Part shown: positions 34,394 to 55,871 of the stretch, one piece after another
How positions within the stretch are numbered: position 1 is the stretch's first letter
How the letters are laid out: every line of letters begins with the position of its first letter
IMG/VR virus record: IMGVR_UViG_3300009370_001221
Span: 124,001 to 188,000 of that record
DNA length: 64,000 bases
Strand: one strand, 5' to 3'
Made by a program: the position numbers and the translations under genes
The notes under the pieces: generated by a model
Database searches by the model: none
Seen by the model: the letters and a program-made list of their open reading frames with translations, nothing else
Told to the model about the DNA's origin: nothing

Positions 34394-35312
34394 AATAGTT
34401 GACATTGCTGACTTAGATTGCGTATACTTAACATACGACGAGCCACAAAAAGATGAGTTTTGGGCCAAGATACTAAACATGGTACCTTGGGCAATACACA
34501 TTGATGGTGTATATGGTTCGGATGCCGCCCATAAAGCGGCTGCCAATGCTTGTGATACTGAGCGATTTGTTTTAATAGATGGTGATAATTTACCTGATCC
34601 AGAGTTTTTTAACTTACAACTAACACTAGATGATGTTACTAAACATTGTGTGTTTAGATGGAAGGGTCGTAATGTTATTAACGGACTAATGTATGGCAAT
34701 GGTGGTTTAAGTTGCTGGCCTGTAGACTTTGTTTTAAACATGACTACACATGAAAACACTGATGGTTCTGATGAAACATTAGTAGAGTTTTGTTTTGACG
34801 ATAATTACAGACCAATGCATAACTGCTATAGTACAACATACCCAAATGGCTCAGCATTACACGCATGGCGTGCTGGGTTTAGAGAAGGTGTTAAAATGGT
34901 TTTAAACAAAGGAACTAAACCTGATTTAAAAACATTTGAAGAGCAAGTACATGCTCGCAACTTCGATAACTTATGCATATGGCAAACTGTTGGGCGTGAT
35001 GTTGAGCATGGCATATGGAGTATATACGGCGCACGTTTAGGGACATTTTTAACAATGCTTACTGATTGGGAGCATGTTAATGTAAGGGACTTCAAATATT
35101 TAAATGAAATGTTTAATGCAGAATATAAAGATAAGGATCCTGAAATAGAATCACAAGTAATAGGTGAAATATTACAAAACAAACTAAACATGCCTATATG
35201 TGAGATGAGTGCTGAGGCAAGTGTGTTCTTTAAAGCACATTACAGCAAGCATACAAACTACGATATAATGATACAAGAATTAGATGTAATACGCGGCATT
35301 GAAGGTTGGTAA
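34386..35312 (+). CDS. Phage GT-A-like glycosyltransferase/nucleotidyltransferase-fold protein
   Basis: YLTYDEP...HIDGVYGSDAAHKAAA..CDTERFVLIDGDN (DxD)...YGNGGLSCW...AWRAGFREGVKM. ATG 34386 preferred over the track start 34278. Confidence 0.65.
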   Translation: MTEIVDIADLDCVYLTYDEPQKDEFWAKILNMVPWAIHIDGVYGSDAAHKAAANACDTERFVLIDGDNLPDPEFFNLQLTLDDVTKHCVFRWKGRNVINGLMYGNGGLSCWPVDFVLNMTTHENTDGSDETLVEFCFDDNYRPMHNCYSTTYPNGSALHAWRAGFREGVKMVLNKGTKPDLKTFEEQVHARNFDNLCIWQTVGRDVEHGIWSIYGARLGTFLTMLTDWEHVNVRDFKYLNEMFNAEYKDKDPEIESQVIGEILQNKLNMPICEMSAEASVFFKAHYSKHTNYDIMIQELDVIRGIEGW

Positions 35313-36739
35313 TGGAACTTTATAAAGATAATAAGGGCGACAAAATAGAAGTTAAGGATGGAAAGTTTAAGTCAGATTTCTATAGAAGTGCTGAGGATAT
35401 TAAAGTACAGTTAGACTCAGTGTCTCCATCCTTTTGTCTTGCTAAATGGAATCAAGTTAGTTTACATTTACCTACAGGCTTAAACAACAGTTGCTATCAT
35501 CCACCACTGCATAAAATGGAGTTAGACACTCCATCTGCATTACATAATACACAACATAAGAAAGAAATGCGTAAACTTATGCTAGAAGGCGAACGTCCTA
35601 GCGAGTGCCAGTACTGTTGGAACATAGAAGATACTGGGCATATGAGTGATAGACATTACAGAAGTGGTGAGCCGTGGGCACAGATGGACTTTGATAATAT
35701 AGTTAATGCTCCGTGGGATGCAGATAAGAACCCGCGTTATGTAGAAGTAAACTTTAATCATAACTGTAACTTAAAATGTAGTTACTGTAGTCCACAGTTT
35801 AGTACTGCGTGGGAAAAGGAAATGAAACAACACGGTGCATGGCCTACATCTAAACCACATAACGCACCTGAACACTTTGAGATTAATCCTTGCATACCAC
35901 ACAGCAAATATAATCCTTATGTACATGCGTTTTGGGAATGGTGGCCTGACTTATATAAAGACTTAAAGCATTTCCGTATGACTGGTGGTGAACCTATGAT
36001 GGATAAAAATACGCATAAAGTATTTGATTACATTATAGACAACCCCAAAAGCGACTTACATTTAAACGTTACAAGTAACTTTAGTCCTGTAGACAACAAA
36101 TTGTTTGACAAGTATTTAGATAAAGTTAAACGTATATGTTTAGATGAGAAGGTAGAACACTTTATGCAATACGTTAGTGTAGATAGTTGGATGGAACAAG
36201 CAGAGTATATACGTAATGGGTTAGATTTTAATAAGATGTGTGATAACATCAACACATACTTAACGGAAGTTCCGTATAGAAACTCTTTAACGTTTATTAT
36301 AACATATAATAATTTAAGTGTTTCAGGAATGGATAAGTTATTAGCCTATATACACGGTTTGCGACAAGCATACAGCGAAACTTATCAACGTGTATGGTTT
36401 GATACGCCGTTATTGCGACAGCCTGCTTGGCAAAGCATACAGTTATTGCCTGAACCATATCAAGATATACACGATGAGAACATATGTTGGATGTTGGATA
36501 ACATGGAAGATGAGAAAACTCGCTTTAAAGGCTTTAAGGATTATGAAGTCCAACGTATGCAACGCGACTTGGCGTGGTGGCAAGAGAGTGATAAGTTAGA
36601 TCCAGAGTATATAGACAACTGTAAAGCAGACTTTTATCGCTTTTTTACTGAGCACGACAAACGTCGTGGCACTAATTTTATAAAAACATTCCCTGAAATG
36701 ATATATTGGTGGGAAGAATGTGAGAGGTTAGCACGTTGA
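35312..36739 (+). CDS. Radical SAM protein with N-terminal twitch/SPASM-like domain (#1)
   Basis: CNLKCSYC, TGGEP, N-terminal FCLAKW...SCYHPP...ECQYCW. ATG 35312 overlaps the upstream TAA. Confidence 0.9.
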   Translation: MELYKDNKGDKIEVKDGKFKSDFYRSAEDIKVQLDSVSPSFCLAKWNQVSLHLPTGLNNSCYHPPLHKMELDTPSALHNTQHKKEMRKLMLEGERPSECQYCWNIEDTGHMSDRHYRSGEPWAQMDFDNIVNAPWDADKNPRYVEVNFNHNCNLKCSYCSPQFSTAWEKEMKQHGAWPTSKPHNAPEHFEINPCIPHSKYNPYVHAFWEWWPDLYKDLKHFRMTGGEPMMDKNTHKVFDYIIDNPKSDLHLNVTSNFSPVDNKLFDKYLDKVKRICLDEKVEHFMQYVSVDSWMEQAEYIRNGLDFNKMCDNINTYLTEVPYRNSLTFIITYNNLSVSGMDKLLAYIHGLRQAYSETYQRVWFDTPLLRQPAWQSIQLLPEPYQDIHDENICWMLDNMEDEKTRFKGFKDYEVQRMQRDLAWWQESDKLDPEYIDNCKADFYRFFTEHDKRRGTNFIKTFPEMIYWWEECERLAR

Positions 36740-37644
36740 CTTTTGTAGCGGATATTAAAAAATTACATGTAGAACCCACTACAGTATGCCAGGCAGAGTG
36801 TCCTATGTGTATTAGAACTCTACAGGGTTATCATAGGACTATGGAAAATAAAGAATTATCATTTAATCAATTTAAAACATTAGTAAAACCATTAATACAC
36901 AACTTAGACCATGTACAATTTTGTGGTTCATTTGGAGATCCTATCGCGTGTAAAGATTTACGCATAATGATGTTATGGATTGGACAAATGAATCAACAAA
37001 CGCATGTTTCAATACACACAAATGGTGGGATAGGAAGCACAAAATTATGGACTCATATTGCTTATCTAACAAGAAGCAACCCTGCTAGTCGTGTTATATT
37101 TGCTATTGATGGATTAGAAGATACTAATCATTTATATAGAAAAAATGTTGTATGGAAAACCTTAATGAAAAATGCTAAAACATTTATCAATGCAGGAGGT
37201 GTAGGGCAAGTGGACATGATTGTATTTAAACACAACGAACACCAGATAGACGAAGCAAAACAATTAGCAAAGGATATGGGATTTAAAGCATTTAAAACTA
37301 AAGCAACTAGCAGATTTGCACATAACCCCAACACTGGATTGGAGCCGCCTACCAATCATTCATTTGAAATGAAAGATAAAGAGTTTGCATGCCACGTGGA
37401 AAAACAGAAAAGTGTTTATTTAAGTGCAGAAGGATTATGGTATCCATGTTGTTGGACACACGTAGCACATGCACAAAAAGATGACCAGTGGGGTGATCCT
37501 ATAGTAAATATCAATGATAGATCAACGAAATGGTATAATTTAGAAAAGAACATACTATCTAAACATTTAGATAAAGTATGCCATAGAGCGTGTGCTACAA
37601 CAGCATTTAGCGGTCAATGGACAACTGAGCAATACTTCTCATGA
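36736..37644 (+). CDS. Radical SAM protein with C-terminal SPASM-like domain (#2)
   Basis: CQAECPMC, GSFGDP, C-terminal C...GLWYPCCW...CHRAC. TTG start. Confidence 0.85.
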   Translation: MTFVADIKKLHVEPTTVCQAECPMCIRTLQGYHRTMENKELSFNQFKTLVKPLIHNLDHVQFCGSFGDPIACKDLRIMMLWIGQMNQQTHVSIHTNGGIGSTKLWTHIAYLTRSNPASRVIFAIDGLEDTNHLYRKNVVWKTLMKNAKTFINAGGVGQVDMIVFKHNEHQIDEAKQLAKDMGFKAFKTKATSRFAHNPNTGLEPPTNHSFEMKDKEFACHVEKQKSVYLSAEGLWYPCCWTHVAHAQKDDQWGDPIVNINDRSTKWYNLEKNILSKHLDKVCHRACATTAFSGQWTTEQYFS

Positions 37645-39005
37645 CATTAAGAACACCAGGTAGAGAATCAGATTTAAAAATTAAACGATGGCTTAACGAG
37701 ACAGTAAGTCCATCATTTTGTATGGCCAAGTGGCGAAACGCTACTATATGGCTTGGAAGTGGTATGACTACTAGTTGTCACCACCCGCCGGCACACAAAA
37801 TAGATATTAAAGAACTACTAAATAATTCATCAGCTATTCATAATACAAAACAAAAAAAGCAAGATAGAGAACAAATGCTTGCAGGCGAAAGGCCACCCGG
37901 TTGTGAATACTGTTGGAAAATAGAAGATATTGGGCCCGATGCTATATCCGATCGTGTCCATAAAAGCGTCATATATGATGAGGAGGACGTACATTATGTT
38001 AGACAAAAAGATGCCGAAGAAAACTTTGCATTACGCACTCTCGAGGCCGCCTTTGATAGGACTTGCAATTTTGCTTGTTCTTATTGCAATCCTGCTTTTA
38101 GTAGTACCTGGGTAAAGGATATAAAGAACAATGGTTCCTACGAGAAATTAAAGTCAGACGGCCGTAACCATTTCACACATCAACACAACGAAGCACAGTT
38201 ATATAAGCACGACGAAACAAATCCATTTACAGAAGCCTTTTGGCAATGGTGGCAAGAAGAACTACACGAAACACTAGATGAGTTTAGGATAACTGGTGGC
38301 GAACCCTTAATGTCGGGCGAAATATGGAAGTTATTTGAATGGTTCAAACTAACAGACAAAAAGTCCGATATGAGGCTCGCTATCAATTCTAACTTAGGTG
38401 CTAAAGACGAACTAATAGATCGCTTTATAGAGAACGCACAACATATTCCACACTTACATCTATATACATCTTGTGAAGCATTCGGCGCACAAGCAGAGTA
38501 TATTAGAGACGGATTAGTATGGGATAAATGGGTAGAAAACTGCCATCGTGTATGTAGGGACGGTAATTTAGAAGGCTTCCATATGATGTGTACTATTAAC
38601 AGTTTGTGCTTGGATTCCTTGCCAAAGTTCTTAGATCACGTAATGAGTTTTAAACAACAGTACGGACGTGACTTTCCTACGTTTACTTTAAACATATTAA
38701 GGTTTCCATCCTTCCAATCTCCACTAGTGCTACCGCAATCAATACGGCAACAATACAGAGACAACTTAGAGCAATGGCTTGTTTTAAACGAAGACAATCT
38801 ACACGAAATGGAAGGCAATCACATACTACGACTGTTAGATTATTTAAGTGTAGTAGATAAACCACACAGCGATACGTTCGAACCAGAAGCACTACAGAAC
38901 GACTTTTATCACTTCTATAAACAATACGACACACGACGAAACAAGAACTTTACAGAGACTTTCCCTAACTTAAAACAATGGTATGAGGAACTACCCCATG
39001 ACTAA
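37641..39005 (+). CDS. Radical SAM protein with N-terminal twitch domain (#3, paralogue of #1)
   Basis: CNFACSYC, TGGEP, FCMAKW...SCHHPP...GCEYCW. Confidence 0.9.
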   Translation: MTLRTPGRESDLKIKRWLNETVSPSFCMAKWRNATIWLGSGMTTSCHHPPAHKIDIKELLNNSSAIHNTKQKKQDREQMLAGERPPGCEYCWKIEDIGPDAISDRVHKSVIYDEEDVHYVRQKDAEENFALRTLEAAFDRTCNFACSYCNPAFSSTWVKDIKNNGSYEKLKSDGRNHFTHQHNEAQLYKHDETNPFTEAFWQWWQEELHETLDEFRITGGEPLMSGEIWKLFEWFKLTDKKSDMRLAINSNLGAKDELIDRFIENAQHIPHLHLYTSCEAFGAQAEYIRDGLVWDKWVENCHRVCRDGNLEGFHMMCTINSLCLDSLPKFLDHVMSFKQQYGRDFPTFTLNILRFPSFQSPLVLPQSIRQQYRDNLEQWLVLNEDNLHEMEGNHILRLLDYLSVVDKPHSDTFEPEALQNDFYHFYKQYDTRRNKNFTETFPNLKQWYEELPHD

Positions 39006-39022
39006 TACGCTAAAGTGGGCGG

Positions 39023-39067
39023 GGCCGAGTCACACCCAGCCGAAACACCTGGTTTGGCGAAATTTTT
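39023..39067 (+). repeat. 45-bp element, copy A (inverted partner at 53287-53331)
   Basis: GGCCGAGTCACACCCA-GCCGAAAC-ACCTGGT-T-TGGCGAAATTTTT, 38/45 identical to the reverse complement of 53287-53331. Confidence 0.9.
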
Positions 39068-39122
39068 TACACAGTAGATACCATATCGGAACATAACAAT
39101 GCAGGGCGGAGGATTTGAATAT

Positions 39123-39296
39123 ATGAATTATTTAAAAAACATACCACGTTGGGGTACTGCACTACTATTAATAGTGTGTGGCATCTGCATAGGAATACTG
39201 TTATCACTAACTTTATTATGTGGTACGGGTGAGCATGAAGTAATCGTAAACAACTTCCTAGGGTATGAGCAACTAATGGTAATTAAACGCTTATGA
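39123..39296 (+). CDS. Small membrane protein
   Basis: GGAGG RBS 10 nt before ATG 39123, one hydrophobic segment. Confidence 0.55.
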   Translation: MNYLKNIPRWGTALLLIVCGICIGILLSLTLLCGTGEHEVIVNNFLGYEQLMVIKRL

Positions 39297-39535
39297 TAAT
39301 AAAACTATTAAAAACAATAAAGAACGTAGTGGATCCTAACTACTGGGCAAGTGAGATAGGCAATAAAACAGGTGCGTACGACAAAGCACATAACAGTAAG
39401 TTGGCTAATTGGTCACGTAGTCTTACAGGATGGAAGTGGTGGGCATGGCAACTAGGCGGAGGTTTGGTGTTTGTTATTGTGATGGAACTGTTATTAAATC
39501 TGCTGGGTATGAGTATGTTACCCTGGAGATGGTAG
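39293..39535 (+). CDS. Small Trp-rich membrane protein
   Basis: ATGA overlap. 80 aa, 8 Trp, C-terminal hydrophobic helix. Confidence 0.6.
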   Translation: MIIKLLKTIKNVVDPNYWASEIGNKTGAYDKAHNSKLANWSRSLTGWKWWAWQLGGGLVFVIVMELLLNLLGMSMLPWRW

Positions 39536-39720: not shown

Positions 39721-41049
39721 ATGGATAAAGGTTACCTTAACAAAGATACACCATTCAATACCACTACACTGTTATTGGATCGTAATAAACAATCGTTGCC
39801 TAATAGCTTCTTTACTATAGAAGAACGTGACTTATTATGTAATAGTGATGTATTCTGTATGCTACCGTGGATCCATATACACGGATGGTCCGATGGTAAT
39901 GCTTACCCGTGCTGTATGGCAGAGCCTAATGAACCTATAGGTAATCTTAGAGATTATACACTCGAAGAAGTATGGAACAATGCCTCCTATAGGACTATGC
40001 GACACAATATGCTCAATGGCATACCGTGTAAGGAGTGTAATAAGTGTTATGAGAAGGAGCGTAATGGGTTTTATTCATTACGTAATGAGAGTAATAGAAA
40101 TTTCGCATATAGTATAAAGGATATCACCACCACTCCTGATGGTTCATCACCAGTTAATCCAATCTATTGGGATGTTCGCTTTACCAATATGTGTAACTTT
40201 AAGTGTAGGATGTGTGGGCCACAGTTTAGTTCTAATTGGGTAAACGAGTATAACAGTATGTATGGGCAATCGGATATAGAGAAAATAAGTTATACGAGAG
40301 GTAATAAGCAATTAAACTGGGAAATGATAGAGCCATATATAGACAATCTCCATAAGATATACTGGGCAGGAGGTGAGCCTTTAATGATGGAAGAACATTG
40401 GCGTATAATGGATGAATTGATTAAGCGAGATAAGTTAGATGTATCGTTAGTATACAATACTAACTTTAGCGAAGTCAAGTATAAGGGGCGTTCAGTATTC
40501 GATATGTGGAGATTATTCGATGATGTCAGTATAGGAGCATCGTTAGATGGAATGGGTGATAGAGCAGAGTATATACGTAAGGGAACGGTGTGGGATACTA
40601 TAGTAAGGAATCGTTACGACATGCTCGATGTGTGCCCAGACGTAGACTTTTTTCCCAGTGCCACATTGCAGGTATTAAACGCATACCACCTACCAGACTT
40701 TCATAACGATTGGGTAGAGCGCGGCCTTATAGGCGTATACGACTTTCATGTAAACATTCTCCAAGGGCCCGACTATTATAGACTCAGTATACTACCCGAC
40801 TATATGAAGGAAGAAGTTAAGTCACTATACGAAGAACACATAAGTAGTATAGCAGATGCCGACGACATTAAGCGAGCCACCAATGGTTTCGAGAGTGCAA
40901 TCAACTTTATGTATAGTGAAGATAGAACGGATCTTATACCAGAGTTCCGTAAAGAAATTACCAAGTATGATAACCACCGTAATGAAGATTTTCAAACGGT
41001 ATTCCCAGAGTTGATACCACTATTCAAAACCTTCCCGGAGAGGTCTTAA
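39721..41049 (+). CDS. Radical SAM protein with N-terminal SPASM domain (#4)
   Basis: FCMLPWIH...DGNAYPCC...ECNKCY, CNFKCRMC, AGGEP. Confidence 0.9.
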   Translation: MDKGYLNKDTPFNTTTLLLDRNKQSLPNSFFTIEERDLLCNSDVFCMLPWIHIHGWSDGNAYPCCMAEPNEPIGNLRDYTLEEVWNNASYRTMRHNMLNGIPCKECNKCYEKERNGFYSLRNESNRNFAYSIKDITTTPDGSSPVNPIYWDVRFTNMCNFKCRMCGPQFSSNWVNEYNSMYGQSDIEKISYTRGNKQLNWEMIEPYIDNLHKIYWAGGEPLMMEEHWRIMDELIKRDKLDVSLVYNTNFSEVKYKGRSVFDMWRLFDDVSIGASLDGMGDRAEYIRKGTVWDTIVRNRYDMLDVCPDVDFFPSATLQVLNAYHLPDFHNDWVERGLIGVYDFHVNILQGPDYYRLSILPDYMKEEVKSLYEEHISSIADADDIKRATNGFESAINFMYSEDRTDLIPEFRKEITKYDNHRNEDFQTVFPELIPLFKTFPERS

Positions 41050-41071
41050 TAGACAGGGCCCTAGAATAACG

Positions 41072-42316
41072 ATGGACTATAATGATAAAAAGCCACTAAA
41101 GATTGATTGGAATGATCTTTCACTATACCAACAATTGGTATTAGAAGAAAACCCATCATTCTGTATGTATCCTTGGACACATTTACACGCATACCCAGAT
41201 AGTTCTGTTCATCTATGCTGTATGAGTGAGATGGATATGCCAGTCGGTAATCTAAATGATAACACGCTGGAGGAAATTTGGCATAGCGAACATATGGTGA
41301 ATATACGTAATAGAATGATTGATGGACTACACAATCCAGAATGCGTCAAGTGTTATGAACAAGATAAGAATGGCTTTATGAGCGGCCGGGTATCAGCGAA
41401 TAAACATTTCGGACACCATATAGCAAAGGCCAATAGTATAGAACCAGACTATGAGATAATATACTGGGATGTTCGGTTTAGCAACCTATGCAATTTTCGC
41501 TGTCGAACGTGTGGTCCCCTGTTTTCAAGCAATTGGTATCAGGATTATGTTAAATTACACCAAAATTCCCCTACAAATAGTAAGGTTATTACGTGTAATC
41601 TGGATATCGAAGAGTGTATCAGGCATATACCATACGTAGAACAGATATATTTCGCTGGTGGAGAACCCCTAATGATGGCCGCACATTGGGAGATTATTGC
41701 CGAATTACTAAAGCAAAATAGAACCGACGTTAAGTTAATATACAATACCAATTTTTCGCAACTCAAATATAAGCAATTGAGTATACTGGATATGTGGAAA
41801 GAGTTTGACTCCGTTAGTATAGGTGCTTCATTAGACGGTTCGGGTATGCGAGGAGAGTATATAAGGAAAGAAACTGTATGGAAAGATATAGTCGATAATA
41901 GAGAACAGATGTTACGAGTATGCCCAAACGTTGATTTCTATATAAGTTGCACGTTGAGTATACTGAATTCGTATCATATGCCAGACTTTCATAAAGAATG
42001 GATCAACTATGGCCTAATAGGAGCACCTGACTTTAACGTGAATATACTAATGAATCCTCCGCATTACCGTATAGACAATTTACCAATGCCAGATAAGGAG
42101 GCGGTAATAGAAAAATACAAACGACATATCGACTATCTTAGTCCAATCGATCCTCTCCAACGTGCAACCAATGGTTTTCAAAGTGCAATTAACTTTATTG
42201 AACAACCGAGCAATGCTAGACTATTCTTAGAGTTTATGGCACTCACCGCTAAAATGGATAAGATTCGTTCTGAGTCGTTTAATGAAACCTTTCCGGAGTT
42301 TAGTTTTGTCAATTAA
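41072..42316 (+). CDS. Radical SAM protein with N-terminal SPASM domain (#5)
   Basis: FCMYPWTH...HLCC...ECVKCY, CNFRCRTC, AGGEP. Confidence 0.9.
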   Translation: MDYNDKKPLKIDWNDLSLYQQLVLEENPSFCMYPWTHLHAYPDSSVHLCCMSEMDMPVGNLNDNTLEEIWHSEHMVNIRNRMIDGLHNPECVKCYEQDKNGFMSGRVSANKHFGHHIAKANSIEPDYEIIYWDVRFSNLCNFRCRTCGPLFSSNWYQDYVKLHQNSPTNSKVITCNLDIEECIRHIPYVEQIYFAGGEPLMMAAHWEIIAELLKQNRTDVKLIYNTNFSQLKYKQLSILDMWKEFDSVSIGASLDGSGMRGEYIRKETVWKDIVDNREQMLRVCPNVDFYISCTLSILNSYHMPDFHKEWINYGLIGAPDFNVNILMNPPHYRIDNLPMPDKEAVIEKYKRHIDYLSPIDPLQRATNGFQSAINFIEQPSNARLFLEFMALTAKMDKIRSESFNETFPEFSFVN

Positions 42317-46011: not shown

Positions 46012-46022
46012 AGGAAGGTGAC

Positions 46023-47797: not shown

Positions 47798-48900
47798 AAA
47801 TACTTGATAAACTAACAATGCGTTTACGTAGTGATGATTTTAGCACTATGGAAGTGTACATGGATGTTTATGACACACCTTTAGGACGTAAATGGTTAAC
47901 TGCACTAAACGACATACTTAATCAAAACTTAATACTAGAAAAAAACTATTGTTTCATGGGATTTATTTTTGGCCAAAGGGACGGTGAAGTAATTTTAAAT
48001 GAAATAAATCACGCAATTAAATTTATAAACGAACATAGTAATATAGATTATAAAATAGAAACAGATGAATACAATTTAGAAAATTGTTTACAGTATGGAG
48101 ATGTTGGTATAGACTTGCCTGGACTAATGGTTAATCATGAAAGGTTTAATTGGTTACACAGATGGTTTGAAGAATTGCAAGGACACGATACTGGTGACGT
48201 AAAAACATCAATGACGTATCATTATTGGAGAGCAGACAAAGAAACAAAATACTATATTAGGCAATTAAACTTATTATGTCACGAGTTTGAAACGTGGGCA
48301 TTAAGTAATCGTAAGTTAGTACAAGCACCAGAATGGATGCAAAAGTCGCAATTAATGTGTTGGCTAAACGCTCCTAGATTCAACTTAGATTCCGACGAGG
48401 ACTTTACGGAGTTTGGTGTCCACGCACTAACAAAAAACTTCGGCGGTGTATATGTAGGTGTTAATAAAGCAGTAGGCAAGACTCATTGGGAAGTATTTAA
48501 TGACGAAGGAGGTGAATCGGGCTCACTGGGAGAAATAACAACTGCTTTATACACACAAACTAAAGCCGCCGGCGATTTTGATATAAATTGGTCGCCTAAT
48601 GAACATTTTTCAGAGCATGAATGGAGAGAACGAAAAATAATTGAGTTTTGTGATTGGCTACGAAGTAATAATTTAGATCCAGATGATCCTTCATTAACAT
48701 TAGGGCACCCAAAGGTAGGACAAGTTGACTTAGAACGTTCTTTTAATACGGAGAATACTCCTATTGTTTGGTATGTTTTAAATAACTTTTTAGATGTACA
48801 AAGTTTAAAAACATCAGACGCATATGCAGAATGGAATTATCGTTGGTATGATGATAAATTTGTTAATATGTCAATAGAGGCCATGCCTGGTGTCTGTTAA
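47794..48900 (+). CDS. Hypothetical protein, His-containing motifs
   Basis: 368-aa coupled ORF with NWLHRWFEELQG and LNLLCHEFE motifs. No family recognised. Confidence 0.7.
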   Translation: MKILDKLTMRLRSDDFSTMEVYMDVYDTPLGRKWLTALNDILNQNLILEKNYCFMGFIFGQRDGEVILNEINHAIKFINEHSNIDYKIETDEYNLENCLQYGDVGIDLPGLMVNHERFNWLHRWFEELQGHDTGDVKTSMTYHYWRADKETKYYIRQLNLLCHEFETWALSNRKLVQAPEWMQKSQLMCWLNAPRFNLDSDEDFTEFGVHALTKNFGGVYVGVNKAVGKTHWEVFNDEGGESGSLGEITTALYTQTKAAGDFDINWSPNEHFSEHEWRERKIIEFCDWLRSNNLDPDDPSLTLGHPKVGQVDLERSFNTENTPIVWYVLNNFLDVQSLKTSDAYAEWNYRWYDDKFVNMSIEAMPGVC

Positions 48901-49864
48901 ATTAGTAATATCAGGTGGTGATAGTTTTACCTTTGGCAGTGAGTTGTCAGATATTGATGAAACTGGAAAGACGCTTGTCCAGCTAATGCCAAGTAAATTT
49001 TCCTGGGCAGATCTAGTAGCACAAAAATTAAAAGCAATACATATTAATACTGCTTGGCCTAGTCGAAGTAATAGTTTTATTACTAGGCATATCATACACG
49101 AAGTATCTAAAGCATTACACTACAATCAGAACATTAATTCCGGAATACTCGGACGGCCAGGCCGAATTCGTCCGTATAGACCTAATGAAATATTCGTTCA
49201 AGTAATGTGGACATATCTTGGAAGACACGAAGTTCTTGTTAATAATTTACTTCACGAGTATGATCGAGGAGGCAAAGCAGGCAAGCCTGGAACTGGTCCA
49301 ATATATTATGATAGACCGGATTCTCCATGGTTTAATGTAGATCCACATAGTGCTTTAGATGATGTTGATAATAAACTTATAGGGTTTGCAAATTATATAG
49401 AAGAGTATTATAAAGTTACTGGAGAGTTAACTGATCATTATATATCTCTTAAAGAAATTTTATTTTTACAAGAATTTTTAGAGAATAGAAACATTAAATA
49501 TATGTTTACGTATGTACACTCTGAGGTTATAGATCAACTTACTGGTATAGATGTAAAAAATGAATATACAACAGATTTAGATACACCTATAGATATTATT
49601 GATGAACTGCGTAGAGAAATAAAATTTGATGAGTGGTTTAGTTTTTCTTCTTGGGAAATGTTTGATAGAAAATCGTATGGTGGATTTAAACGCCCAGAAA
49701 AAGATTATATTGGTTTTTGGAATTGGGCAGCCGGATCACAACGCACAAGTCCAACAAAGAAGAGGAAAAAATATAAATTTGGTCCTGGAGGCCACCCATT
49801 AGAACAAGCACATATAGATGCGGCGGAGATAATATATGATCACATTAGTAATCTCTGGGGGTGA
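48890..49864 (+). CDS. SGNH/GDSL-like hydrolase or acyltransferase (#1)
   Basis: SGGDSFTFGSEL block I, SRSN block II, C-terminal GHPLEQAH. Confidence 0.65.
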   Translation: MSVKLVISGGDSFTFGSELSDIDETGKTLVQLMPSKFSWADLVAQKLKAIHINTAWPSRSNSFITRHIIHEVSKALHYNQNINSGILGRPGRIRPYRPNEIFVQVMWTYLGRHEVLVNNLLHEYDRGGKAGKPGTGPIYYDRPDSPWFNVDPHSALDDVDNKLIGFANYIEEYYKVTGELTDHYISLKEILFLQEFLENRNIKYMFTYVHSEVIDQLTGIDVKNEYTTDLDTPIDIIDELRREIKFDEWFSFSSWEMFDRKSYGGFKRPEKDYIGFWNWAAGSQRTSPTKKRKKYKFGPGGHPLEQAHIDAAEIIYDHISNLWG

Positions 49865-50744
49865 TAGTTTCACGTTTGGTAGTGAATTGTCAGATGATTG
49901 TGGCACGATGCACGTGCCGGTAGTCACCAGCACACCCTATCATCGACCAACTCAACCTATAAGGCTAGGGCCATTCGCAGCTGCAAGTAAACATTCTTGG
50001 GCCAATTTAACAGCAAATAAATTAAATGCAAAACATATTAACACGGGAGAGAGTGGCCGTAGTAATTCCTATATTGTTAGGCATATTATTAATATAATAT
50101 ATGAAGCATTAGAACACAACTATAAACCTGACGAAATATTTGTTCAAGTAATGTGGACATTTGTGGCAAGACAAGAAATTGCTGTAAATTTTGACATAAA
50201 AAGGTATGATAGTCCGTGGTTTGCTGTAGATCCTTATGTATGTGAGGATGAGACTAAATCAAATTGGTTTAAAAAAGTATCCAAAAGTGTGCCAAATTGG
50301 CAAGAAGTACATGATGATATGCATAAGCGATATTTAATAAACAAAGATTTAGGGTTAGTAGACTATGCAAAATCATATTATACAGTTGTAAGTGATTTGC
50401 ATGACAAATATACATCACTACAGAAAATTTTAATGCTACAAGACTTTTTAGAGAGTAGAAATGTTAAATATATGTTTACATATGTCAATGAACATGTAAT
50501 GAAAGGCCTTATTAGTATAGATAAGTTTACTAATGGCTTACATAGTTTTATAAAATTTGATGAGTGGTTTAAATTTCCCGGCGATAAAGAGTTTATGGGG
50601 TTCGATGATTGGGCAAAAGCAAATGGTTATCCATATGCTACGTCACATCCACTTGAACAGGCACATAAAGATGCCGCGGAACTGTTATATGAAAAAGCCA
50701 AACAAATTATCACAGGAAGCGTGGGGCCAATACCCGGAGAGTGA
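49836..50744 (+). CDS. SGNH/GDSL-like protein (#2, tandem paralogue of #1)
   Basis: SGGDSFTFGSEL, GRSN, SHPLEQAH. Shares FVQVMWT with #1. Confidence 0.65.
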   Translation: MITLVISGGDSFTFGSELSDDCGTMHVPVVTSTPYHRPTQPIRLGPFAAASKHSWANLTANKLNAKHINTGESGRSNSYIVRHIINIIYEALEHNYKPDEIFVQVMWTFVARQEIAVNFDIKRYDSPWFAVDPYVCEDETKSNWFKKVSKSVPNWQEVHDDMHKRYLINKDLGLVDYAKSYYTVVSDLHDKYTSLQKILMLQDFLESRNVKYMFTYVNEHVMKGLISIDKFTNGLHSFIKFDEWFKFPGDKEFMGFDDWAKANGYPYATSHPLEQAHKDAAELLYEKAKQIITGSVGPIPGE

Positions 50745-50745
50745 T

Positions 50746-50895
50746 GTGCAAGAAAAATTAAAAAGTTTAATAGTACACAAACCTAGTAAAGGTTATCGTT
50801 GGTTACGGGATAAGATACTTACTATTAAACGAGAACTTAAATATCGTAAACGTTTAAAAGAATTGAAAAAGAAAGATCCATTTATATATAAATGA
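50746..50895 (+). CDS. Small basic hypothetical protein (49 aa)
   Basis: GTG start with GGAG 6 nt upstream, ends LKELKKKDPFIYK, ATGA overlap with next gene. The longer track ORF 50557 overlaps SGNH #2. Confidence 0.5.
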   Translation: MQEKLKSLIVHKPSKGYRWLRDKILTIKRELKYRKRLKELKKKDPFIYK

Positions 50896-51134
50896 ACATA
50901 TTAGATTTACACGGTTATAACTTACAAGATGCATACAACGAAACATTAAGTTTTCTCAGAGATATGCACAAAGACAAAGAGAAAAAAGTAAAAGTTATTA
51001 CTGGTAAAGGAGCAATTGCAAAAGAATTCCCTTTTTGGATAGAAAAAAGTTCTTATATAAAAAGGTTTGAACCAACAAATGATGGAGGTTGTTGGTACAT
51101 CACTATGGCTGATCAATACCGACCAACAATGTAA
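50892..51134 (+). CDS. Stand-alone Smr domain protein
   Basis: LDLHG...A...FL...VKVITGKG Smr signature in 80 aa. Confidence 0.8.
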   Translation: MNILDLHGYNLQDAYNETLSFLRDMHKDKEKKVKVITGKGAIAKEFPFWIEKSSYIKRFEPTNDGGCWYITMADQYRPTM

Positions 51135-51721
51135 TGATTTTTACCAATGGTGATAGTTTTACTTACGGAGATGAATTAGATAAACCGTATAGCGAAGCAT
51201 GGCCGTATATTTTATCACAGATGCTTAATTTAGACGTAGTAAATTTTGGTGAAAATGGTAAAGATAATGCTGGTATAGTACAAACAACAAAAGATTATTG
51301 GTCTATTACTGGTAGTTTTTCTGAAGCCTTCCCGCCTACAATTTGGATTATACAGTGGTCAACATTCAGACGATTTAACGACAACCCCCCAATAGATGTA
51401 ATATTACAAAAATTAGACAAGCAATATTTGCTTGATTTATACTTTGTACATGTAAGAGACTTACAAGATTGGTTTGAAGAGCATAATTTTTCTTATATAA
51501 TGTTTAATGGTTTTGATAATGAAAAATACATAAGTGATAGTGATTCAGAGTTTAAGCAACTAGTTGACGATAAGTATTTTATAGGCTGGCCAGATGAAGC
51601 AGTAGTAAATTGGGTATATGAATATGAACATGGTCCTAGAGGCCACCCAAGAGCAGAAGGCCATAGAAGAATAGCGGAAATACTCTATGAAAATATTAGG
51701 AGTAAGTTGCGGTTTCCATGA
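51134..51721 (+). CDS. SGNH/GDSL-like protein (#3)
   Basis: TNGDSFTYGDEL, GKDN, GHPRAEGHRRIA. Confidence 0.7.
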   Translation: MIFTNGDSFTYGDELDKPYSEAWPYILSQMLNLDVVNFGENGKDNAGIVQTTKDYWSITGSFSEAFPPTIWIIQWSTFRRFNDNPPIDVILQKLDKQYLLDLYFVHVRDLQDWFEEHNFSYIMFNGFDNEKYISDSDSEFKQLVDDKYFIGWPDEAVVNWVYEYEHGPRGHPRAEGHRRIAEILYENIRSKLRFP

Positions 51722-53288
51722 TGCGGCAATTAGTTTAATAGATGACGGTGAAATATTGTTCGCTGGACACGCAGAACGTTATAGCAAAGTAAAACACGAT
51801 AAAGAATTAAACAGCAAGTTACTTAACAACGCATTAGATTATGGTTACCCCGATTTTGTCTCATACTATGAAAATCCGTGGCTTAAGAAAACTAGACAGT
51901 TGTATTCCGGGCAATGGAAAGACTTGTTTACAGAGTTTAGCATTAAAAAGAAAATAGCATACAACACAGGGTTTAGATGGAACAAAACTAGTTTTAATTA
52001 TCATAATCATCACCACAGCCACGCCGCCGCAGGCTTCCAAACAAGTCCTTTTAATGATGCCACTGTAGTAGTAATAGATGCTATTGGAGAATGGGATTGT
52101 ATTACGTTATGGAATGCATATTATGATGGTAATGGCCAAGCCTGCTATGAAAGAATTTGGGGAGCAAAGTATCCTAATAGTGTAGGACTGTTTTACAGTG
52201 CGATGACGCAAAAAGTTGGCTTGCGGCCGTTAGATGAAGAGTATATTTTAATGGGTATGGCAGCATATGGAGAGCCAATTTATAATAGAGAAATACTAGA
52301 TAAGTTTTGGAAAATTGGCGGTCCGAAAATACTTCGTGCAAGAGAAAACTTACATTTAGGCACTGATTGGCACAGTGGCCCGCCATGGACGTCACAAGAT
52401 GACGATATGGTAGAACAAGACCAATACGATATAGCCGCTTCTGCTCAAGTTGCACTAGAACAAGTTGTAACATACATAATGAATTTTGCACGGCGTATTG
52501 GCAAGTCTCCTAATTTAGTTTACATGGGAGGTGTTGCGTTAAATTGCGTTTGTAATACTAATATTTCCCGCATTTGGGAGGATGTTTGGATTATGCCCAA
52601 TCCTGGTGATGCTGGCAGTAGTTTAGGCGCGGCCGCCCTAACATATGGTAAGAAACTAAACTGGCGAGGGCCGTTCCTGGGGTATGATATAAAAGGTGAA
52701 TACCCAGATGGAGAAATTATAAAAGAATTAATGTCCTCACGTCAAATTGTGGGCGTTGCCAACGGTAGAGCGGAGTTTGGTCCAAGGGCACTAGGCAATA
52801 GGACATTGTTTGCTGATCCACGCGGGCCAGACATTAAAGATAAAGTAAATGAGATAAAGCGTCGGCAAAAGTTTAGGCCGTTTGCTCCAATGATACTCGA
52901 AGAGAGATCAGAAGAGTACTTTGAAATGCCACTAGTAACTACACCAGCACATCCTTCTACACGCCCTTCTTTTTCCGTACATAAGTCAGGTCAACCGCAT
53001 CATTTTACAATGACACACATTCCAAGTCCGTTTATGCAGTATGTAGGACGGTGTAGACAGCCAGATAAGTTTCCGGCGATTGTACATAAGGATGGCACAA
53101 GCAGAGTGCAGACGGTAGGGCCAAATGATAATCCTAATGTACGTAAATTGCTTAAGATGTGGGAATATTATACAGGTTGTCCAATGTTGTTAAATACTAG
53201 TTTAAACATTAGAGGCGAGCCAATGGTAAATGACATTGAAGACGCCAAGCGTTTTACTGAACTATATGGTGTAAAAGTATGCACATAA
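51687..53288 (+). CDS. Carbamoyltransferase (NodU/CmcH/TobZ family)
   Basis: ILGVSCGFHDAA, HHHSHAAA, VIDAIGE, MGMAAYG, GGVALNC, PGDAGSSLGAA, EFGPRALGNR, FRPFAP, HKDGTSRVQTV, LLNTSLN. Confidence 0.93.
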   Translation: MKILGVSCGFHDAAISLIDDGEILFAGHAERYSKVKHDKELNSKLLNNALDYGYPDFVSYYENPWLKKTRQLYSGQWKDLFTEFSIKKKIAYNTGFRWNKTSFNYHNHHHSHAAAGFQTSPFNDATVVVIDAIGEWDCITLWNAYYDGNGQACYERIWGAKYPNSVGLFYSAMTQKVGLRPLDEEYILMGMAAYGEPIYNREILDKFWKIGGPKILRARENLHLGTDWHSGPPWTSQDDDMVEQDQYDIAASAQVALEQVVTYIMNFARRIGKSPNLVYMGGVALNCVCNTNISRIWEDVWIMPNPGDAGSSLGAAALTYGKKLNWRGPFLGYDIKGEYPDGEIIKELMSSRQIVGVANGRAEFGPRALGNRTLFADPRGPDIKDKVNEIKRRQKFRPFAPMILEERSEEYFEMPLVTTPAHPSTRPSFSVHKSGQPHHFTMTHIPSPFMQYVGRCRQPDKFPAIVHKDGTSRVQTVGPNDNPNVRKLLKMWEYYTGCPMLLNTSLNIRGEPMVNDIEDAKRFTELYGVKVCT

Positions 53289-54021: not shown

Positions 54022-54706
54022 AAACGGAAAGAGTGATGTTAGTAAACATGATTTTGAAAAACTAGCAAATAGTAAGAAAAGTAAAGACAGAACACCATTC
54101 CCTGCAGGGAAGGTTCCTGAACGTGAATCAGAAGATACTATAGTTATCTATGGTGCTAAACGTGCTGGTAATCATTACTTACAGAGTTATTTTCATTCAA
54201 TTGGTGAGAAGTGTGAGTTTAGGCATGAAGCAGCTCATGCTAAAAAGTTATTTTTAACAAAAGGCAAACAGTTAATTATACTTGTACGTAATCCAGAAGA
54301 CCAGATAATATCTAATACCTATAGTATGTTTAATGCTGATAAAGATGGGTATGGTGTTGGTACAAAAGATCGACCATTAAAAGATTTATCTGCCCAGGCT
54401 ATACCTTATCAAGTAGTAGGACAAGCATGTGAATATTTAAAAAAATTCACAGACACTATGATTACATTAACTATGTCATATCCATTTCAATTCGTATTGT
54501 ATGATACCATAATACAGAATAAATTAAATAGTATATACACGCAACGTGATCCACAGTACTATAAAGATTATATATTAAATTACGACGATATTTTAATAAT
54601 GTTAGCAAATAGCGATATTTGTGAATATTGTTTAACACATTGGCGTGCTTATAACTTACAACAAACTGTCTACTATCCAGAATTAGCAAATGTTAATAAA
54701 TCGTAA
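54014..54706 (+). CDS. Sulfotransferase-like P-loop protein
   Basis: YGAKRAGNHYL (5'-PSB-like) and LVRNPEDQIIS (3'-PB-like). Confidence 0.55.
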   Translation: MAKNGKSDVSKHDFEKLANSKKSKDRTPFPAGKVPERESEDTIVIYGAKRAGNHYLQSYFHSIGEKCEFRHEAAHAKKLFLTKGKQLIILVRNPEDQIISNTYSMFNADKDGYGVGTKDRPLKDLSAQAIPYQVVGQACEYLKKFTDTMITLTMSYPFQFVLYDTIIQNKLNSIYTQRDPQYYKDYILNYDDILIMLANSDICEYCLTHWRAYNLQQTVYYPELANVNKS

Positions 54707-55871
54707 AATTCTCTCAAATACTACGGCAACTAAATTCCAAGTAAGAAGAAAATATAGAGAACGTAAAGGTCCTTTATTAGAAAAAGATTATACATGTTGG
54801 TATCCACATCGTAGTCTAACAATTGATCAACTAGGAGAATGTTATATATGTACATGTGAAGCATGGTTACCTTATTCTGTTGGAAATATTTTAGAATTCG
54901 ATGATCTTACCGACATTTGGACTAATAATATTGCTAGAAAACTCCAAAACAATACTAAAACCGGCACAACATTTAAATTTTGTGATACTTCAATTTGTAA
55001 TCCGTGGTCAAAATCGTATCAACAAGCAAGAGCGTTACCATATCAAATTGCAATTTGTACAGATGATAGTTGTAATTTGCGATGCCCTAGTTGTCGTACT
55101 GATCTGATTCATTTTAATAAAGGTCCAATATACGAAAAAAGAAAATTATATACTGATAGAATTACATCGTTAATGAAAGACTTTGATCTACCTGTTTCGT
55201 GTGCTTTGGGTGGTAGTGGAGAGATTTTTAGTTCTAAAATTTTGTCTGATGTTTTGTATAATTATGAGCCAAATGATAAACATCGATTTAAAATTAAAAC
55301 TAATGGAACTCTTATAGATAACCGAGTTAAAGATAGTCCAATTATGCAAAAACTTTCAGAATTTACAATCAGTATTGATGCTGGGAGCAAATCAGTATAT
55401 GATGTTGTAAGACCTCCGGCTAACTGGAATAAATTAAGATCAAATTTAGATTTTTTAAGGGAAAATAATTTTCAATTATCTTTTAATTTTGTCCTCCAAA
55501 AAGCCAATTTATATGATGTAATTAATTTTGCAGATTTATGTGAGCATTATGGTGCTATAGGACACTATGAAGGTATAAATGATTGGGGTACATGGAATTA
55601 CGAAACTTATTTAAAACAAAGAATCCATCAACCTGAAGATGAATTATATTCCGAGTGGAATAAAATTAAAGAACAACTTCTTCAGCATTCATGGAGAGAT
55701 TATTTAATATTTGCTTCTAATATTGATACAGAAAACCAATTTACATATGAGAGATTATATTCCAAACACCCAAACAAGAATTATTTACCGCTAGGATACA
55801 ATGAAAATGATGGGACATACCACAGTGAAAGACATCCGATGCTAGGTCTTAAATGGACATTAGATAATTAA
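54690..55871 (+). CDS. Radical SAM protein with N-terminal SPASM-like domain (#8)
   Basis: CWYPHRSLTIDQLGECYICTC, CNLRCPSC, GGSGE. Confidence 0.88.
   Translation: MLINRKILSNTTATKFQVRRKYRERKGPLLEKDYTCWYPHRSLTIDQLGECYICTCEAWLPYSVGNILEFDDLTDIWTNNIARKLQNNTKTGTTFKFCDTSICNPWSKSYQQARALPYQIAICTDDSCNLRCPSCRTDLIHFNKGPIYEKRKLYTDRITSLMKDFDLPVSCALGGSGEIFSSKILSDVLYNYEPNDKHRFKIKTNGTLIDNRVKDSPIMQKLSEFTISIDAGSKSVYDVVRPPANWNKLRSNLDFLRENNFQLSFNFVLQKANLYDVINFADLCEHYGAIGHYEGINDWGTWNYETYLKQRIHQPEDELYSEWNKIKEQLLQHSWRDYLIFASNIDTENQFTYERLYSKHPNKNYLPLGYNENDGTYHSERHPMLGLKWTLDN

What the first reader, a model, noticed from the sequence alone, without database searches (positions are those of the whole stretch)
35312..55871. 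Array of eight phage radical SAM enzymes, seven with the SPASM/twitch domain N-terminal to the core
Seen: seven CxxxCxxC genes lie in a near-contiguous 9.6-kb run (35312-44959) and an eighth at 54690. Seven carry the Cys-rich auxiliary module (FCxxPWxH...PCC...CxxC, or FCxAKW...SCxHPP...CxYCW) before the SAM core; only #2 has it C-terminal. Two subfamilies are visible (#1/#3 and #4-#7). Known: characterised SPASM/twitch enzymes (anSME, AlbA, MftC, BtrN, MoaA) carry this module C-terminally and modify peptides, proteins or sugars; BtrN oxidises an aminocyclitol. Inference: a paralogue-expanded enzyme set acting on a shared substrate class, most likely the glycans made by the adjacent GTs and amino-sugar genes, or virion proteins.
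Basis: partly seen in the sequence, partly recalled or inferred. Interest (0 to 1): 0.8.

Follow-up and report, generated by a model that had tools for sequence, protein, structure and literature searches.

The report
Conserved phage radical SAM enzyme cassette
A marine T4-like phage carries eight iron-sulfur "radical SAM" enzyme genes, six from a catalogued but apparently unstudied family with its extra iron-sulfur domain at the front; they form an old five-member cassette kept beside sugar-transferase genes in many uncultured phages and most likely tailor a glycan.

Summary
Exactly eight ORFs in the window carry CxxxCxxC, at the stated coordinates. Six (#1, #3-#7) score 274-397 bits against NCBIfam NF033640 "N_Twi_rSAM" (cutoff 170). 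The N-terminal twitch architecture is therefore already curated, though I found no paper that characterises it. #8 belongs to a separate, rarer family with an N-terminal SPASM-like module. #2 has the usual domain order.

The array is not a recent paralogue burst. A tree resolves five deep subfamilies (A-E) that recur in the same order in related phage contigs. All 80 best IMG/VR loci carry 3-6 such genes. dN/dS against orthologues is 0.07-0.12.

The cassette sits in a conserved ~20 kb module after the tail-fibre genes. That module holds GT8-like and GT-A-like proteins, SGNH-like proteins, a carbamoyltransferase and a 368-aa family with no PDB fold match. Bacterial homologues often lie among GT2, NDP-sugar and GDSL genes, and some are fused to TPR/Sel1 repeats.

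Best reading (about 0.45): stepwise radical tailoring of a glycan, with the fully Cys-ligated twitch cluster acting as a redox relay. Main rival (about 0.25): modification of virion proteins. The substrate is unproven.

The parts
35312..36739 (+). rSAM #1, N_Twi_rSAM subfamily A (ATG at 35312 overlaps the upstream stop; a TTG at 35306 is also open)
   Evidence: NF033640 312.6 bits. Cys 44/63/101/104 plus C154xxxC158xxC161. Clade A in the tree. dN/dS 0.08.
36736..37644 (+). rSAM #2, 302 aa, conventional order: core at residue 18, Cys-rich C-terminus. An accessory insert found in only 6 of 85 loci.
   Evidence: Pfam Radical_SAM 28.4 bits, NF033640 only 35.5 bits. Cluster c22. Weak twitch-profile match at 226-265.
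37641..39005 (+). rSAM #3, N_Twi_rSAM subfamily B
   Evidence: NF033640 321.9 bits. Clade B. dN/dS 0.10.
39039..39535 (+). Terminator-like hairpin (39039-39058) and two small ORFs with a hydrophobic stretch (read by eye; no TM prediction was run), at 39099-39296 and 39293-39535. They split the array into two units. The close relative L005 lacks this gap.
39721..41049 (+). rSAM #4, N_Twi_rSAM subfamily C
   Evidence: NF033640 397.2 bits, Pfam SPASM at 46-109. AF2 model pLDDT 93.9. Clade C, which also holds the bacterial singletons.
41072..42316 (+). rSAM #5, N_Twi_rSAM subfamily C, duplicate of #4 (47.5% identity)
42282..43667 (+). rSAM #6, N_Twi_rSAM subfamily D
   Evidence: NF033640 341.6 bits. 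Clade D.
43601..44959 (+). rSAM #7, N_Twi_rSAM subfamily E (start uncertain: GTG at 43601 or ATG at 43643)
   Evidence: NF033640 273.6 bits. Clade E.
54690..55871 (+). rSAM #8, a separate family with an N-terminal SPASM-like module. Its orthologue in L005 is fused in front of the #7 orthologue.
   Evidence: Pfam SPASM at 36-98 and Radical_SAM at 127-282. NF033640 36.7 bits. Fusion seen. Only 48 word-index relatives.
34278..35312 (+). 344-aa GT-A-like protein (cluster c1), immediately upstream of the cassette in 77 of 85 phage loci
   Evidence: Atlas leads to GT2/GT92/CgtA. 26% identity to the C-terminus of ORF 55878-59099.
31756..33436 (+). Two GT8-like (glycogenin-like) paralogues (cluster c2): 31756-32595 and 32573-33436
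   Evidence: The family profile hits only glycogenins in the PDB, E 8e-4 to 0.05, through the DxD motif. Present in 66 of 85 loci.
28815..31756 (+). Tail-fibre-like protein (28815-30359), 32% Ser/Thr protein (30452-31366) and a 116-aa protein (31406-31756). These are conserved leaders of the module (c8, c6, c7).
44941..47797 (+). GlnII-like, purC, purE and YqeY genes. This insertion lies between rSAM E and c4 and is seen only in this window and L005.
47794..48900 (+). 368-aa protein (cluster c4). It follows rSAM E in the loci inspected and is present in 56 of 85 loci. The model is confident but has no PDB fold match.
48890..51721 (+). DUF6071/GDSL-like paralogues (cluster c9): 48890-49864, 49836-50744, 51134-51721
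51687..53288 (+). NodU/CmcH-type carbamoyltransferase (cluster c5), present in 55 of 85 loci
55878..59099 (+). 1073-aa protein with six FDFSW[HQ]P repeats and a C-terminal domain homologous to the 344-aa GT-A-like protein
59942..62048 (-). DegT-family sugar aminotransferase (59942-61075) and SDR NDP-sugar epimerase/decarboxylase-like gene (61053-62048)
   Evidence: Present in 11 and 15 of 85 loci respectively.

Best explanation
The six N_Twi_rSAM genes are one copy each (two for C) of five ancient subfamilies, A-B-C-C'-D-E. Together with #8, and optionally #2, they belong to a conserved ~20 kb glycan-building and glycan-tailoring module. This module follows the tail-fibre genes in a large group of uncultured T4-like phages related to the Rak2/Atu_ph07 group.

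Proposed mechanism: each enzyme binds SAM at the CxxxCxxC [4Fe-4S] cluster, generates a 5'-deoxyadenosyl radical and abstracts a hydrogen from a sugar carbon. The sugar could be an NDP-sugar or a residue of a growing oligosaccharide made by the neighbouring GT8-like, GT-A-like and GT10-like transferases. The N-terminal twitch domain holds a second [4Fe-4S] cluster ligated by four invariant Cys. As proposed for BtrN, this cluster would take up or return the electron. The net chemistry would then be oxidation, epimerisation or dehydration at a position specific to each subfamily. SGNH-like enzymes, the carbamoyltransferase and the unknown 368-aa protein would add further decorations. The product probably decorates the adjacent Ser/Thr-rich fibre proteins or the host surface.

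Shown: family membership, the Cys and SAM motifs, the fold, the conserved order, purifying selection and the co-occurrence with GT-type genes. Inferred: the presence of a second cluster, the redox role, a sugar substrate and the target of the glycan.
For: Membership and motifs. Confident rSAM-core model for #4.

Five deep orthologous clades, each phage array holding one member of each in the same order. All 80 best IMG/VR loci carry 3-6 N_Twi genes, and 52 carry exactly five.

Conserved neighbours across 85 loci: GT-A-like c1 in 77, GT8-like c2 in 66, c3 in 57, c4 in 56, carbamoyltransferase in 55, SGNH-like c9 in 34. The c2 profile hits only glycogenin GT8 in the PDB. c3 has GT10 leads and sits between rSAM genes. 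The flank carries a DegT sugar aminotransferase and an NDP-sugar SDR.

Bacterial homologues lie among GT2, GT4, NDP-sugar epimerase/dehydratase, TylCIII-type C-methyltransferase, RmlD, GDSL, AsnB and ABC-transporter genes.

Four invariant Cys imply a fully ligated auxiliary cluster. BtrN has such a cluster, and it is proposed to accept an electron during a two-electron sugar oxidation (PMC9012708).

dN/dS is 0.07-0.12. 29 of the 150 best representatives are natural fusions of 2-3 modules, which argues that the paralogues act together.
Against: No member of the family has a known substrate. Many bacterial singletons sit in contexts with no glycan genes, for example Reichenbachiella and Nitratireductor; only about 16 of 54 bacterial-labelled loci show glycan-type neighbours.

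The best fold matches are peptide-modifying SPASM enzymes, although all have TM 0.3-0.5. Recurrent TPR/Sel1 fusions fit protein recognition as well as polysaccharide machinery.

The GT assignments for c1 and c3 rest on language-model leads below the tool's trust level, and Pfam finds nothing for them. The module's position among fibre genes could reflect a hypervariable island rather than shared function. Cultured phages with N_Twi genes (RsoM2USA, Vibrio K566) lack c1-c4 by profile search.
Confidence: 0.45

Rival explanations
1. The cassette modifies proteins: the tail-fibre or other virion proteins encoded next to it, or a peptide. The chemistry would be RiPP-like (thioether or C-C crosslinks, epimerisation, Cys/Ser oxidation), with each paralogue acting on a different site. 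The GTs would act separately.
For: The top fold matches are SkfB, anSME, CteB and SuiB. NCBIfam gives partial hits to sactipeptide and ryptide maturases. Bacterial homologues are fused to TPR/Sel1 protein-interaction repeats. The cassette always follows fibre-like and Ser/Thr-rich structural genes. An Asp/Arg hydroxylase and PhyH dioxygenases are neighbours in some loci.
Against: Pfam and NCBIfam report no PqqD/RRE domain in any of the eight. No conserved small precursor ORF was found; the only small ORFs lie in a gap that the nearest relative lacks. Fold matches to nucleotide- and sugar-acting enzymes (viperin, BlsE, MoaA, DesII) are about as good. A twitch with a single cluster is less typical of RiPP maturases than a full SPASM domain (PMC9012708).
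Confidence: 0.25
2. The enzymes act on a nucleotide, on DNA or on a small molecule, for example an aminocyclitol- or nucleoside-like metabolite. This would be BtrN-, viperin- or MoaA-like chemistry. The product would serve as a modified base, a defence or counter-defence molecule, or an antibiotic-like compound.
For: There are partial NCBIfam and fold hits to viperin, MoaA and QueE. Arg94, Arg121 and Arg286 are invariant, which would fit an anionic, phosphate-bearing substrate. purC, purE and GlnII are embedded in the array. The best PDB hit of the flanking aminotransferase is a glutamine-scyllo-inositol transaminase.
Against: The purC/purE/GlnII block occurs only in this window and L005 among 85 loci, so it is an insertion. 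The nearby thymidylate synthase is an ordinary ThyX, not a hydroxymethylase. The viperin and MoaA scores are far below their cutoffs. An NDP-sugar would also explain the invariant arginines.
Confidence: 0.1
3. The array is a recent, lineage-specific expansion of redundant paralogues, driven by an arms race over host range (diversifying copies of one activity).
For: It lies in a region resembling the hypervariable 'host recognition cluster' described for pelagimyophages, where rSAM cassettes come and go (PMC7029224). #4 and #5 are a true duplicate pair.
Against: The paralogues are only 21-34% identical apart from #4/#5. Each groups with orthologues from diverged phages and Bdellovibrionota rather than with its neighbours, and the order is conserved. 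dN/dS is 0.07-0.12.
Confidence: 0.04

Closest known systems
NCBIfam NF033640, N_Twi_rSAM (twitch domain-containing radical SAM protein)
   Same: #1, #3, #4, #5, #6 and #7 match the whole 398-position model at 274-397 bits against a cutoff of 170. They share the same N-terminal twitch, core and helical C-terminus.
   Different: None for those six. #2 (35.5 bits) and #8 (36.7 bits) are not members. The family has a name but, as far as I could find, no characterised member or published function.
BtrN (twitch radical SAM dehydrogenase of butirosin biosynthesis)
   Same: Both have one auxiliary [4Fe-4S] site with four Cys ligands. BtrN has a carbohydrate-like substrate and works with a DegT-family aminotransferase; a DegT gene flanks this module. 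Its auxiliary cluster is thought to accept an electron (PMC9012708).
   Different: In BtrN the twitch is C-terminal. phmmer against the PDB finds no sequence similarity. BtrN is not among the 50 best fold matches. The enzymes here also have an extra conserved helical C-terminal domain.
SPASM peptide/protein maturases (anSME, SkfB, CteB, SuiB)
   Same: They are the best Foldseek matches to the model of #4. Pfam SPASM matches the Cys-rich module.
   Different: TM is only 0.35-0.43, covering essentially the core. Their auxiliary domain is C-terminal and usually binds two clusters. No RRE or precursor peptide is present here.
Radical SAM gene sets reported in marine T4-like phages
   Same: Nishimura et al. 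2017 (PMC5332604) report a T4-like environmental genome with 12 rSAM genes. Zaragoza-Solas et al. 2020 (PMC7029224) report rSAM cassettes and glycosyltransferases in the 'host recognition cluster' after the giant VrlC gene. The layout here is comparable, after a 4850-aa ORF whose identity I did not test.
   Different: Those papers mention the genes only in passing. They do not identify the family, the N-terminal twitch, the five-subfamily order or the conserved partners. The baseplate protein of this phage is closest to Atu_ph07/Rak2-type jumbo phages, not to cultured pelagiphages or cyanophages.

Membership tests
Radical SAM superfamily | CxxxCxxC motif for the SAM-binding [4Fe-4S] cluster | tested here: met
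   Present once in each of the eight ORFs and in no other ORF of the window.
Radical SAM superfamily | Pfam PF04055 at or above its gathering score (29.5 bits) | tested here: inconclusive
   All eight score 23-29 bits (E 1e-4 to 1e-6), just under the cutoff. Membership rests instead on NF033640 and the fold.
Radical SAM superfamily | Partial TIM-barrel core fold | tested here: met
   The AF2 model of #4 (pLDDT 93.9) gives 38 PDB matches at E<=1e-3; those listed are all radical SAM enzymes. Only #4 was modelled.
Radical SAM superfamily | Reductive cleavage of SAM | not testable with these tools
   Needs anaerobic reconstitution and a 5'-deoxyadenosine assay.
NCBIfam NF033640 N_Twi_rSAM | Whole-protein score of at least 170 bits | tested here: met
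   #1 312.6, #3 321.9, #4 397.2, #5 371.0, #6 341.6, #7 273.6 bits.
NCBIfam NF033640 N_Twi_rSAM (for #2 and #8) | Whole-protein score of at least 170 bits | tested here: not met
   #2 35.5 bits and #8 36.7 bits, as partial matches to the core only.
Twitch/SPASM auxiliary domain | Cys-rich module matching PF13186 (cutoff 21.5 bits) | tested here: met
   #4 41.9, #5 47.3, #6 27.6 and #8 25.7 bits, all N-terminal. #7 scores 20.0, just below the cutoff. #1 and #3 have no Pfam hit but match a twitch-only family profile at 72-76 bits and keep the four Cys.
Twitch/SPASM auxiliary domain | Position C-terminal to the core, as in all characterised members | tested here: not met
   The module precedes the core in seven of the eight ORFs. 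The review PMC9012708 describes these domains as C-terminal extensions.
Twitch (one cluster) versus SPASM (two clusters) | Number of auxiliary-cluster ligands | tested here: inconclusive
   Exactly four Cys are invariant across 61 family members, which fits one fully ligated cluster. #8 has six Cys in the module.
RiPP radical SAM maturases | RRE/PqqD-like recognition domain and a nearby precursor peptide | tested here: not met
   No such domain in the Pfam or NCBIfam scans. No conserved small ORF; the 39005-39721 gap is absent from L005.
BtrN / MoaA / viperin families | Sequence-level membership (family model score, or detectable similarity to solved members) | tested here: not met
   MoaA scores at most 31 bits against a cutoff of 284, and viperin at most 30 against 180. 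phmmer against the PDB finds nothing.

The most novel reading that the evidence does not exclude
The five N_Twi subfamilies, the #8-type enzyme, the fold-orphan 368-aa protein, three glycosyltransferase-like families, SGNH-like enzymes and a carbamoyltransferase together form a phage-encoded assembly line. It would build a heavily C-H-functionalised glycan on the tail fibres. That would be a kind of virion glycosylation, and of radical carbohydrate chemistry, with no characterised precedent, and it would assign a function to a family of about 8,000 protein clusters.
Probability: 0.2. Interest if true: 0.8.

Novelty: new member of a known kind. Interest (0 to 1): 0.55.

Why it matters
It has a curated name, but I found no known reaction for it. 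It is also the one sizeable group in which the twitch domain is placed in front of the radical SAM core.

This window shows the family in its commonest natural setting, a five-subfamily cassette locked to glycosyltransferase-type genes behind the tail fibres of uncultured T4-like phages. That setting turns 'what do these enzymes do?' into a concrete experiment, because a defined gene set, candidate substrates and candidate acceptor proteins all sit side by side.

If the inferred second cluster is real, a phage that maintains eight such enzymes commits up to sixteen [4Fe-4S] clusters per set in seawater. Related loci add Fe-S assembly and reductase genes. This suggests that the product matters for infection or host range.

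Tried and rejected
- Megablast of the array against GenBank phages found no match. tblastn found only six distant records, all annotated 'hypothetical' or 'radical SAM'.
- phmmer of #2, #4 and #8 against the PDB found nothing.
- Foldseek of the #4 model gave only generic core matches at TM 0.3-0.5, so it names no function.
- Bacterial singleton contexts (Reichenbachiella, Nitratireductor) are uninformative.
- The 368-aa partner has no Pfam, PHROG, Atlas, PDB-sequence or PDB-fold match. It is found only in uncultured Caudovirales and Atu_ph07.
- Pfam finds nothing for c3 and c10, and almost nothing for c2. PDB profile searches were empty for c1 and c4; for c3 they gave only a weak hit (E 0.006) to rubrerythrin, which I took to be chance.
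- The T4 late-promoter motif occurs only once in the window, so it says nothing about when the cassette is expressed.
- There are no tRNAs and no Rfam hits.
- Profiles of c1-c4 find nothing in RsoM2USA or Vibrio phage K566, so no cultured phage with the full module was identified.
- I tested whether 50892-51721 is a broken gene. It is not: the 195-aa product is nearly as long as its 208-218-aa homologues.
- Literature searches for 'N-terminal SPASM/twitch', NF033640, or radical SAM with capsule or jumbo-phage terms found no characterisation.

Full report
WHAT THE WINDOW IS. The window is a T4-like myovirus fragment. It carries SbcCD-like gp46/47 genes, a gp55-type late sigma factor, a baseplate hub and a gp6-type baseplate wedge. 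The wedge protein is 34-38% identical to those of Atu_ph07, Phosso, SCTP-2 and Rak2/GAP32-type jumbo phages. A 4850-aa ORF follows the baseplate genes. The window is identical to IMG/VR contig UViG_3300013114_000208, 77.8 kb. Its array is found at 0.90-0.98 word share in four marine or seawater DNA runs from two studies, and at lower share in ten more.

THE OBSERVATION. Pfam Radical_SAM hits all eight just under its gathering score. NCBIfam is decisive: #1, #3, #4, #5, #6 and #7 match NF033640, 'N_Twi_rSAM, twitch domain-containing radical SAM protein', over its full length at 274-397 bits against a cutoff of 170. In an alignment of 61 family members the invariant residues are as follows:
- four Cys before the core (C46, C65, C106, C109 of #4; spacing C-x18-C-x40-CxxC);
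- the three core Cys (158/162/165);
- GGEP (217-220);
- R94, R121, N248, S274 and R286.

A C-terminal D417/R420/P429 motif is nearly invariant. Pfam SPASM matches residues 46-109 of #4 at 41.9 bits, and also the N-termini of #5, #6 and #8.

#8 has an N-terminal SPASM-like module with six Cys but belongs to a different, rarer family. #2 has the core at residue 18 and a C-terminal C...CC...CxxxC pattern, which only weakly resembles the twitch profile (E 0.02). So the count 'seven N-terminal, one C-terminal' is right. The module in #2 is the least certain.

ARE THE GENES REAL AND FUNCTIONAL? Contigs from two independent metagenomes cover the #4-#7 stretch colinearly. They show no indels and only scattered substitutions, several of them spaced three bases apart. 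Against the orthologues on contig L005, dN/dS is 0.07-0.12 for #1, #3, #4 and #5; dS is saturated for the others. Short contigs at 99% identity or better occur in marine RNA libraries. This is compatible with transcription but does not prove it.

NOT A LOCAL EXPANSION BUT AN OLD CASSETTE. The paralogues are 21-34% identical, apart from #4/#5 at 47.5%. A maximum-likelihood tree of 83 family members from phage-like and bacterial loci resolves five deep clades. Each of #1, #3, #4/#5, #6 and #7 groups with orthologues from other arrays (L001, L005, L007, L055) rather than with its neighbours. Those arrays keep the same order, A-B-C-D-E.

All 80 best loci carry 3-6 N_Twi genes on one strand, and 52 carry exactly five. 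Arrays also occur in Bdellovibrionota, including eight tandem copies on a 1.89-Mb chromosome. Clade C also contains the single-copy genes of cultured Bacteroidota and Alphaproteobacteria.

An exhaustive profile search finds 8,153 clusters (50% identity) at E<=1e-30. 29 of the 150 best representatives are natural fusions of two or three N_Twi modules. In L005 the #8 orthologue is fused in front of the #7 orthologue. These fusions argue that the paralogues work together.

THE CONSERVED MODULE. I clustered all ORFs of 85 phage loci. The canonical order is: fibre-like c8, Ser/Thr-rich c6, small c7, two c2, one or two c1, rSAM A, [c3 or a #2-like gene], B, C, D, [c3], E, c4, [c9], carbamoyltransferase c5.

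What each cluster appears to be:
- c2 (window 31756-33436) is GT8-like. Its profile hits only glycogenins in the PDB, through the DxD motif.
- c1 (34278-35312) is a phage-specific family with GT-A leads. It shares a domain with the C-terminus of the 1073-aa ORF that follows #8.
- c3 is absent from this window but sits between rSAM genes elsewhere. It has GT10 fucosyltransferase leads only.
- c9 is DUF6071/GDSL-like.
- c4 (47794-48900) gives a confident model (pLDDT 86, pTM 0.86) with no PDB match. Its only structural relatives are from uncultured Caudovirales and Atu_ph07.

In this window and L005 a GlnII-purC-purE-YqeY block has been inserted between E and c4. On the far flank lie a DegT-family sugar aminotransferase, an NDP-sugar SDR and an ordinary ThyX.

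BACTERIAL CONTEXTS. Singletons in Reichenbachiella and Nitratireductor have uninformative neighbours. About 16 of 54 bacterial-labelled loci hold GT2, NDP-sugar epimerase/dehydratase, PhyH dioxygenase, GDSL, AsnB or ABC-transporter genes. Look-ups of fused representatives gave further examples:
- An N_Twi-TPR protein lies next to an NDP-sugar epimerase/C-methyltransferase fusion, RmlD and a GT2.
- A Sel1-N_Twi protein lies amid four GT2 genes, a GT4, GDSL enzymes, B12-radical SAM enzymes and TPR proteins.

TPR/Sel1 repeats suit protein recognition. They are also typical scaffolds of exopolysaccharide modification machinery; that last point is from my own knowledge.

STRUCTURE. The AF2 model of #4 is confident (pLDDT 93.9, pTM 0.90). 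Ahead of the barrel it shows a beta-hairpin between the first two Cys and helices carrying the CxxC. After the barrel comes a helical C-terminal domain. Foldseek finds only core-level similarity, at TM 0.3-0.5, to SkfB, anSME, CteB, SuiB, viperin, BlsE, MoaA and DesII. No sequence relative has a solved structure.

MECHANISM. Characterised twitch enzymes differ in their auxiliary cluster. MoaA has three Cys and an open iron that binds the substrate. BtrN has four Cys and a low-potential cluster thought to accept the electron in a two-electron oxidation of an aminocyclitol (PMC9012708). Four invariant Cys place N_Twi on the BtrN side. My best explanation is therefore stepwise, position-specific radical tailoring (oxidation, epimerisation or dehydration) of sugars. 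The neighbouring transferases would assemble those sugars, and the product would probably be displayed on the adjacent fibre proteins or on the host surface (confidence about 0.45).

The main rival is RiPP-like modification of virion proteins (about 0.25). The peptide-maturase fold hits and the TPR fusions favour it. The lack of any RRE domain or precursor peptide weakens it. A nucleotide, DNA or small-molecule role is less likely (about 0.1), because the purine genes are a lineage-specific insertion and ThyX is ordinary.

COMPARISON AND NOVELTY. The N-terminal twitch is already captured by NCBIfam. Multi-rSAM sets in marine T4-like phages have been noted in passing (PMC5332604; PMC7029224). 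I found no paper on the family itself. The window is thus a new member of a known but uncharacterised kind. What appears undescribed is the five-subfamily cassette with fixed order and its fixed partnership with GT-type genes and the fold-orphan c4 protein.

Noticed in passing
window 47794-48900: A 368-aa protein family follows rSAM E in the phage loci inspected (present in 56 of 85 loci). Invariant residues include H122, E126, C162, H163, E164, E166, D237, E238 and D263. The AF2 model is confident, yet no PDB fold match reaches E<0.2. It may be a new, possibly metal-binding, fold.
   Followed up: partly
window 13517-28069: A single 4850-aa ORF, Thr/Gly/Ser-rich, lies directly after the gp6-type baseplate wedge. 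This is the position of the giant VrlC baseplate protein described for pelagi- and cyanomyophages.
   Followed up: no
window 44941-47797: A GlnII-like glutamine synthetase (377 bits, below the 500-bit equivalog cutoff), purC, purE and YqeY are inserted inside the otherwise conserved module. Among 85 loci this is seen only here and in L005.
   Followed up: partly
window 55878-59099: A 1073-aa protein has six copies of an FDFSW[HQ]P motif (residues 104-701) and a C-terminal domain 26% identical to the 344-aa GT-A-like protein. Similar large c1-family proteins end the module in other loci.
   Followed up: partly
window 3845-3852 (- strand) and whole window: The T4 late-promoter motif TATAAATA occurs once, against 14.7 expected from shuffles. 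The single copy lies just upstream of the gp55-like late sigma gene. The strong depletion is unexplained.
   Followed up: no
window 39005-39721: A 716-bp gap between #3 and #4 holds a terminator-like hairpin and two overlapping small ORFs (65 and 80 aa), each with a hydrophobic stretch. The 84-94% identical relative L005 has no such gap.
   Followed up: partly
P0181, P0197, P0205, P0207, P0211, P0221, P0227, P0230, P0249, P0256, P0270 (environmental N_Twi proteins): About a dozen of the 150 best family representatives carry an unannotated N-terminal domain of ~125-150 aa with a conserved '...NxRIIF...LNxVDISNFFV' motif ahead of the twitch. Others carry TPR or Sel1 repeats.
   Followed up: partly
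L053 (OZ220490.1, Bdellovibrionales chromosome) 2282-13874: Eight N_Twi genes, seven of them in one tandem run and four nearly identical, plus another rSAM lie next to an AsnB-type asparagine synthase on a 1.89-Mb bacterial chromosome. I did not check whether this is a prophage remnant.
   Followed up: no
L001 15695-18188: In a related phage array the carbamoyltransferase is flanked by a ferredoxin-reductase-like protein (NAD_binding_1/6) and an FeS_assembly_P protein. These may supply electrons and clusters to the rSAM set.
   Followed up: no
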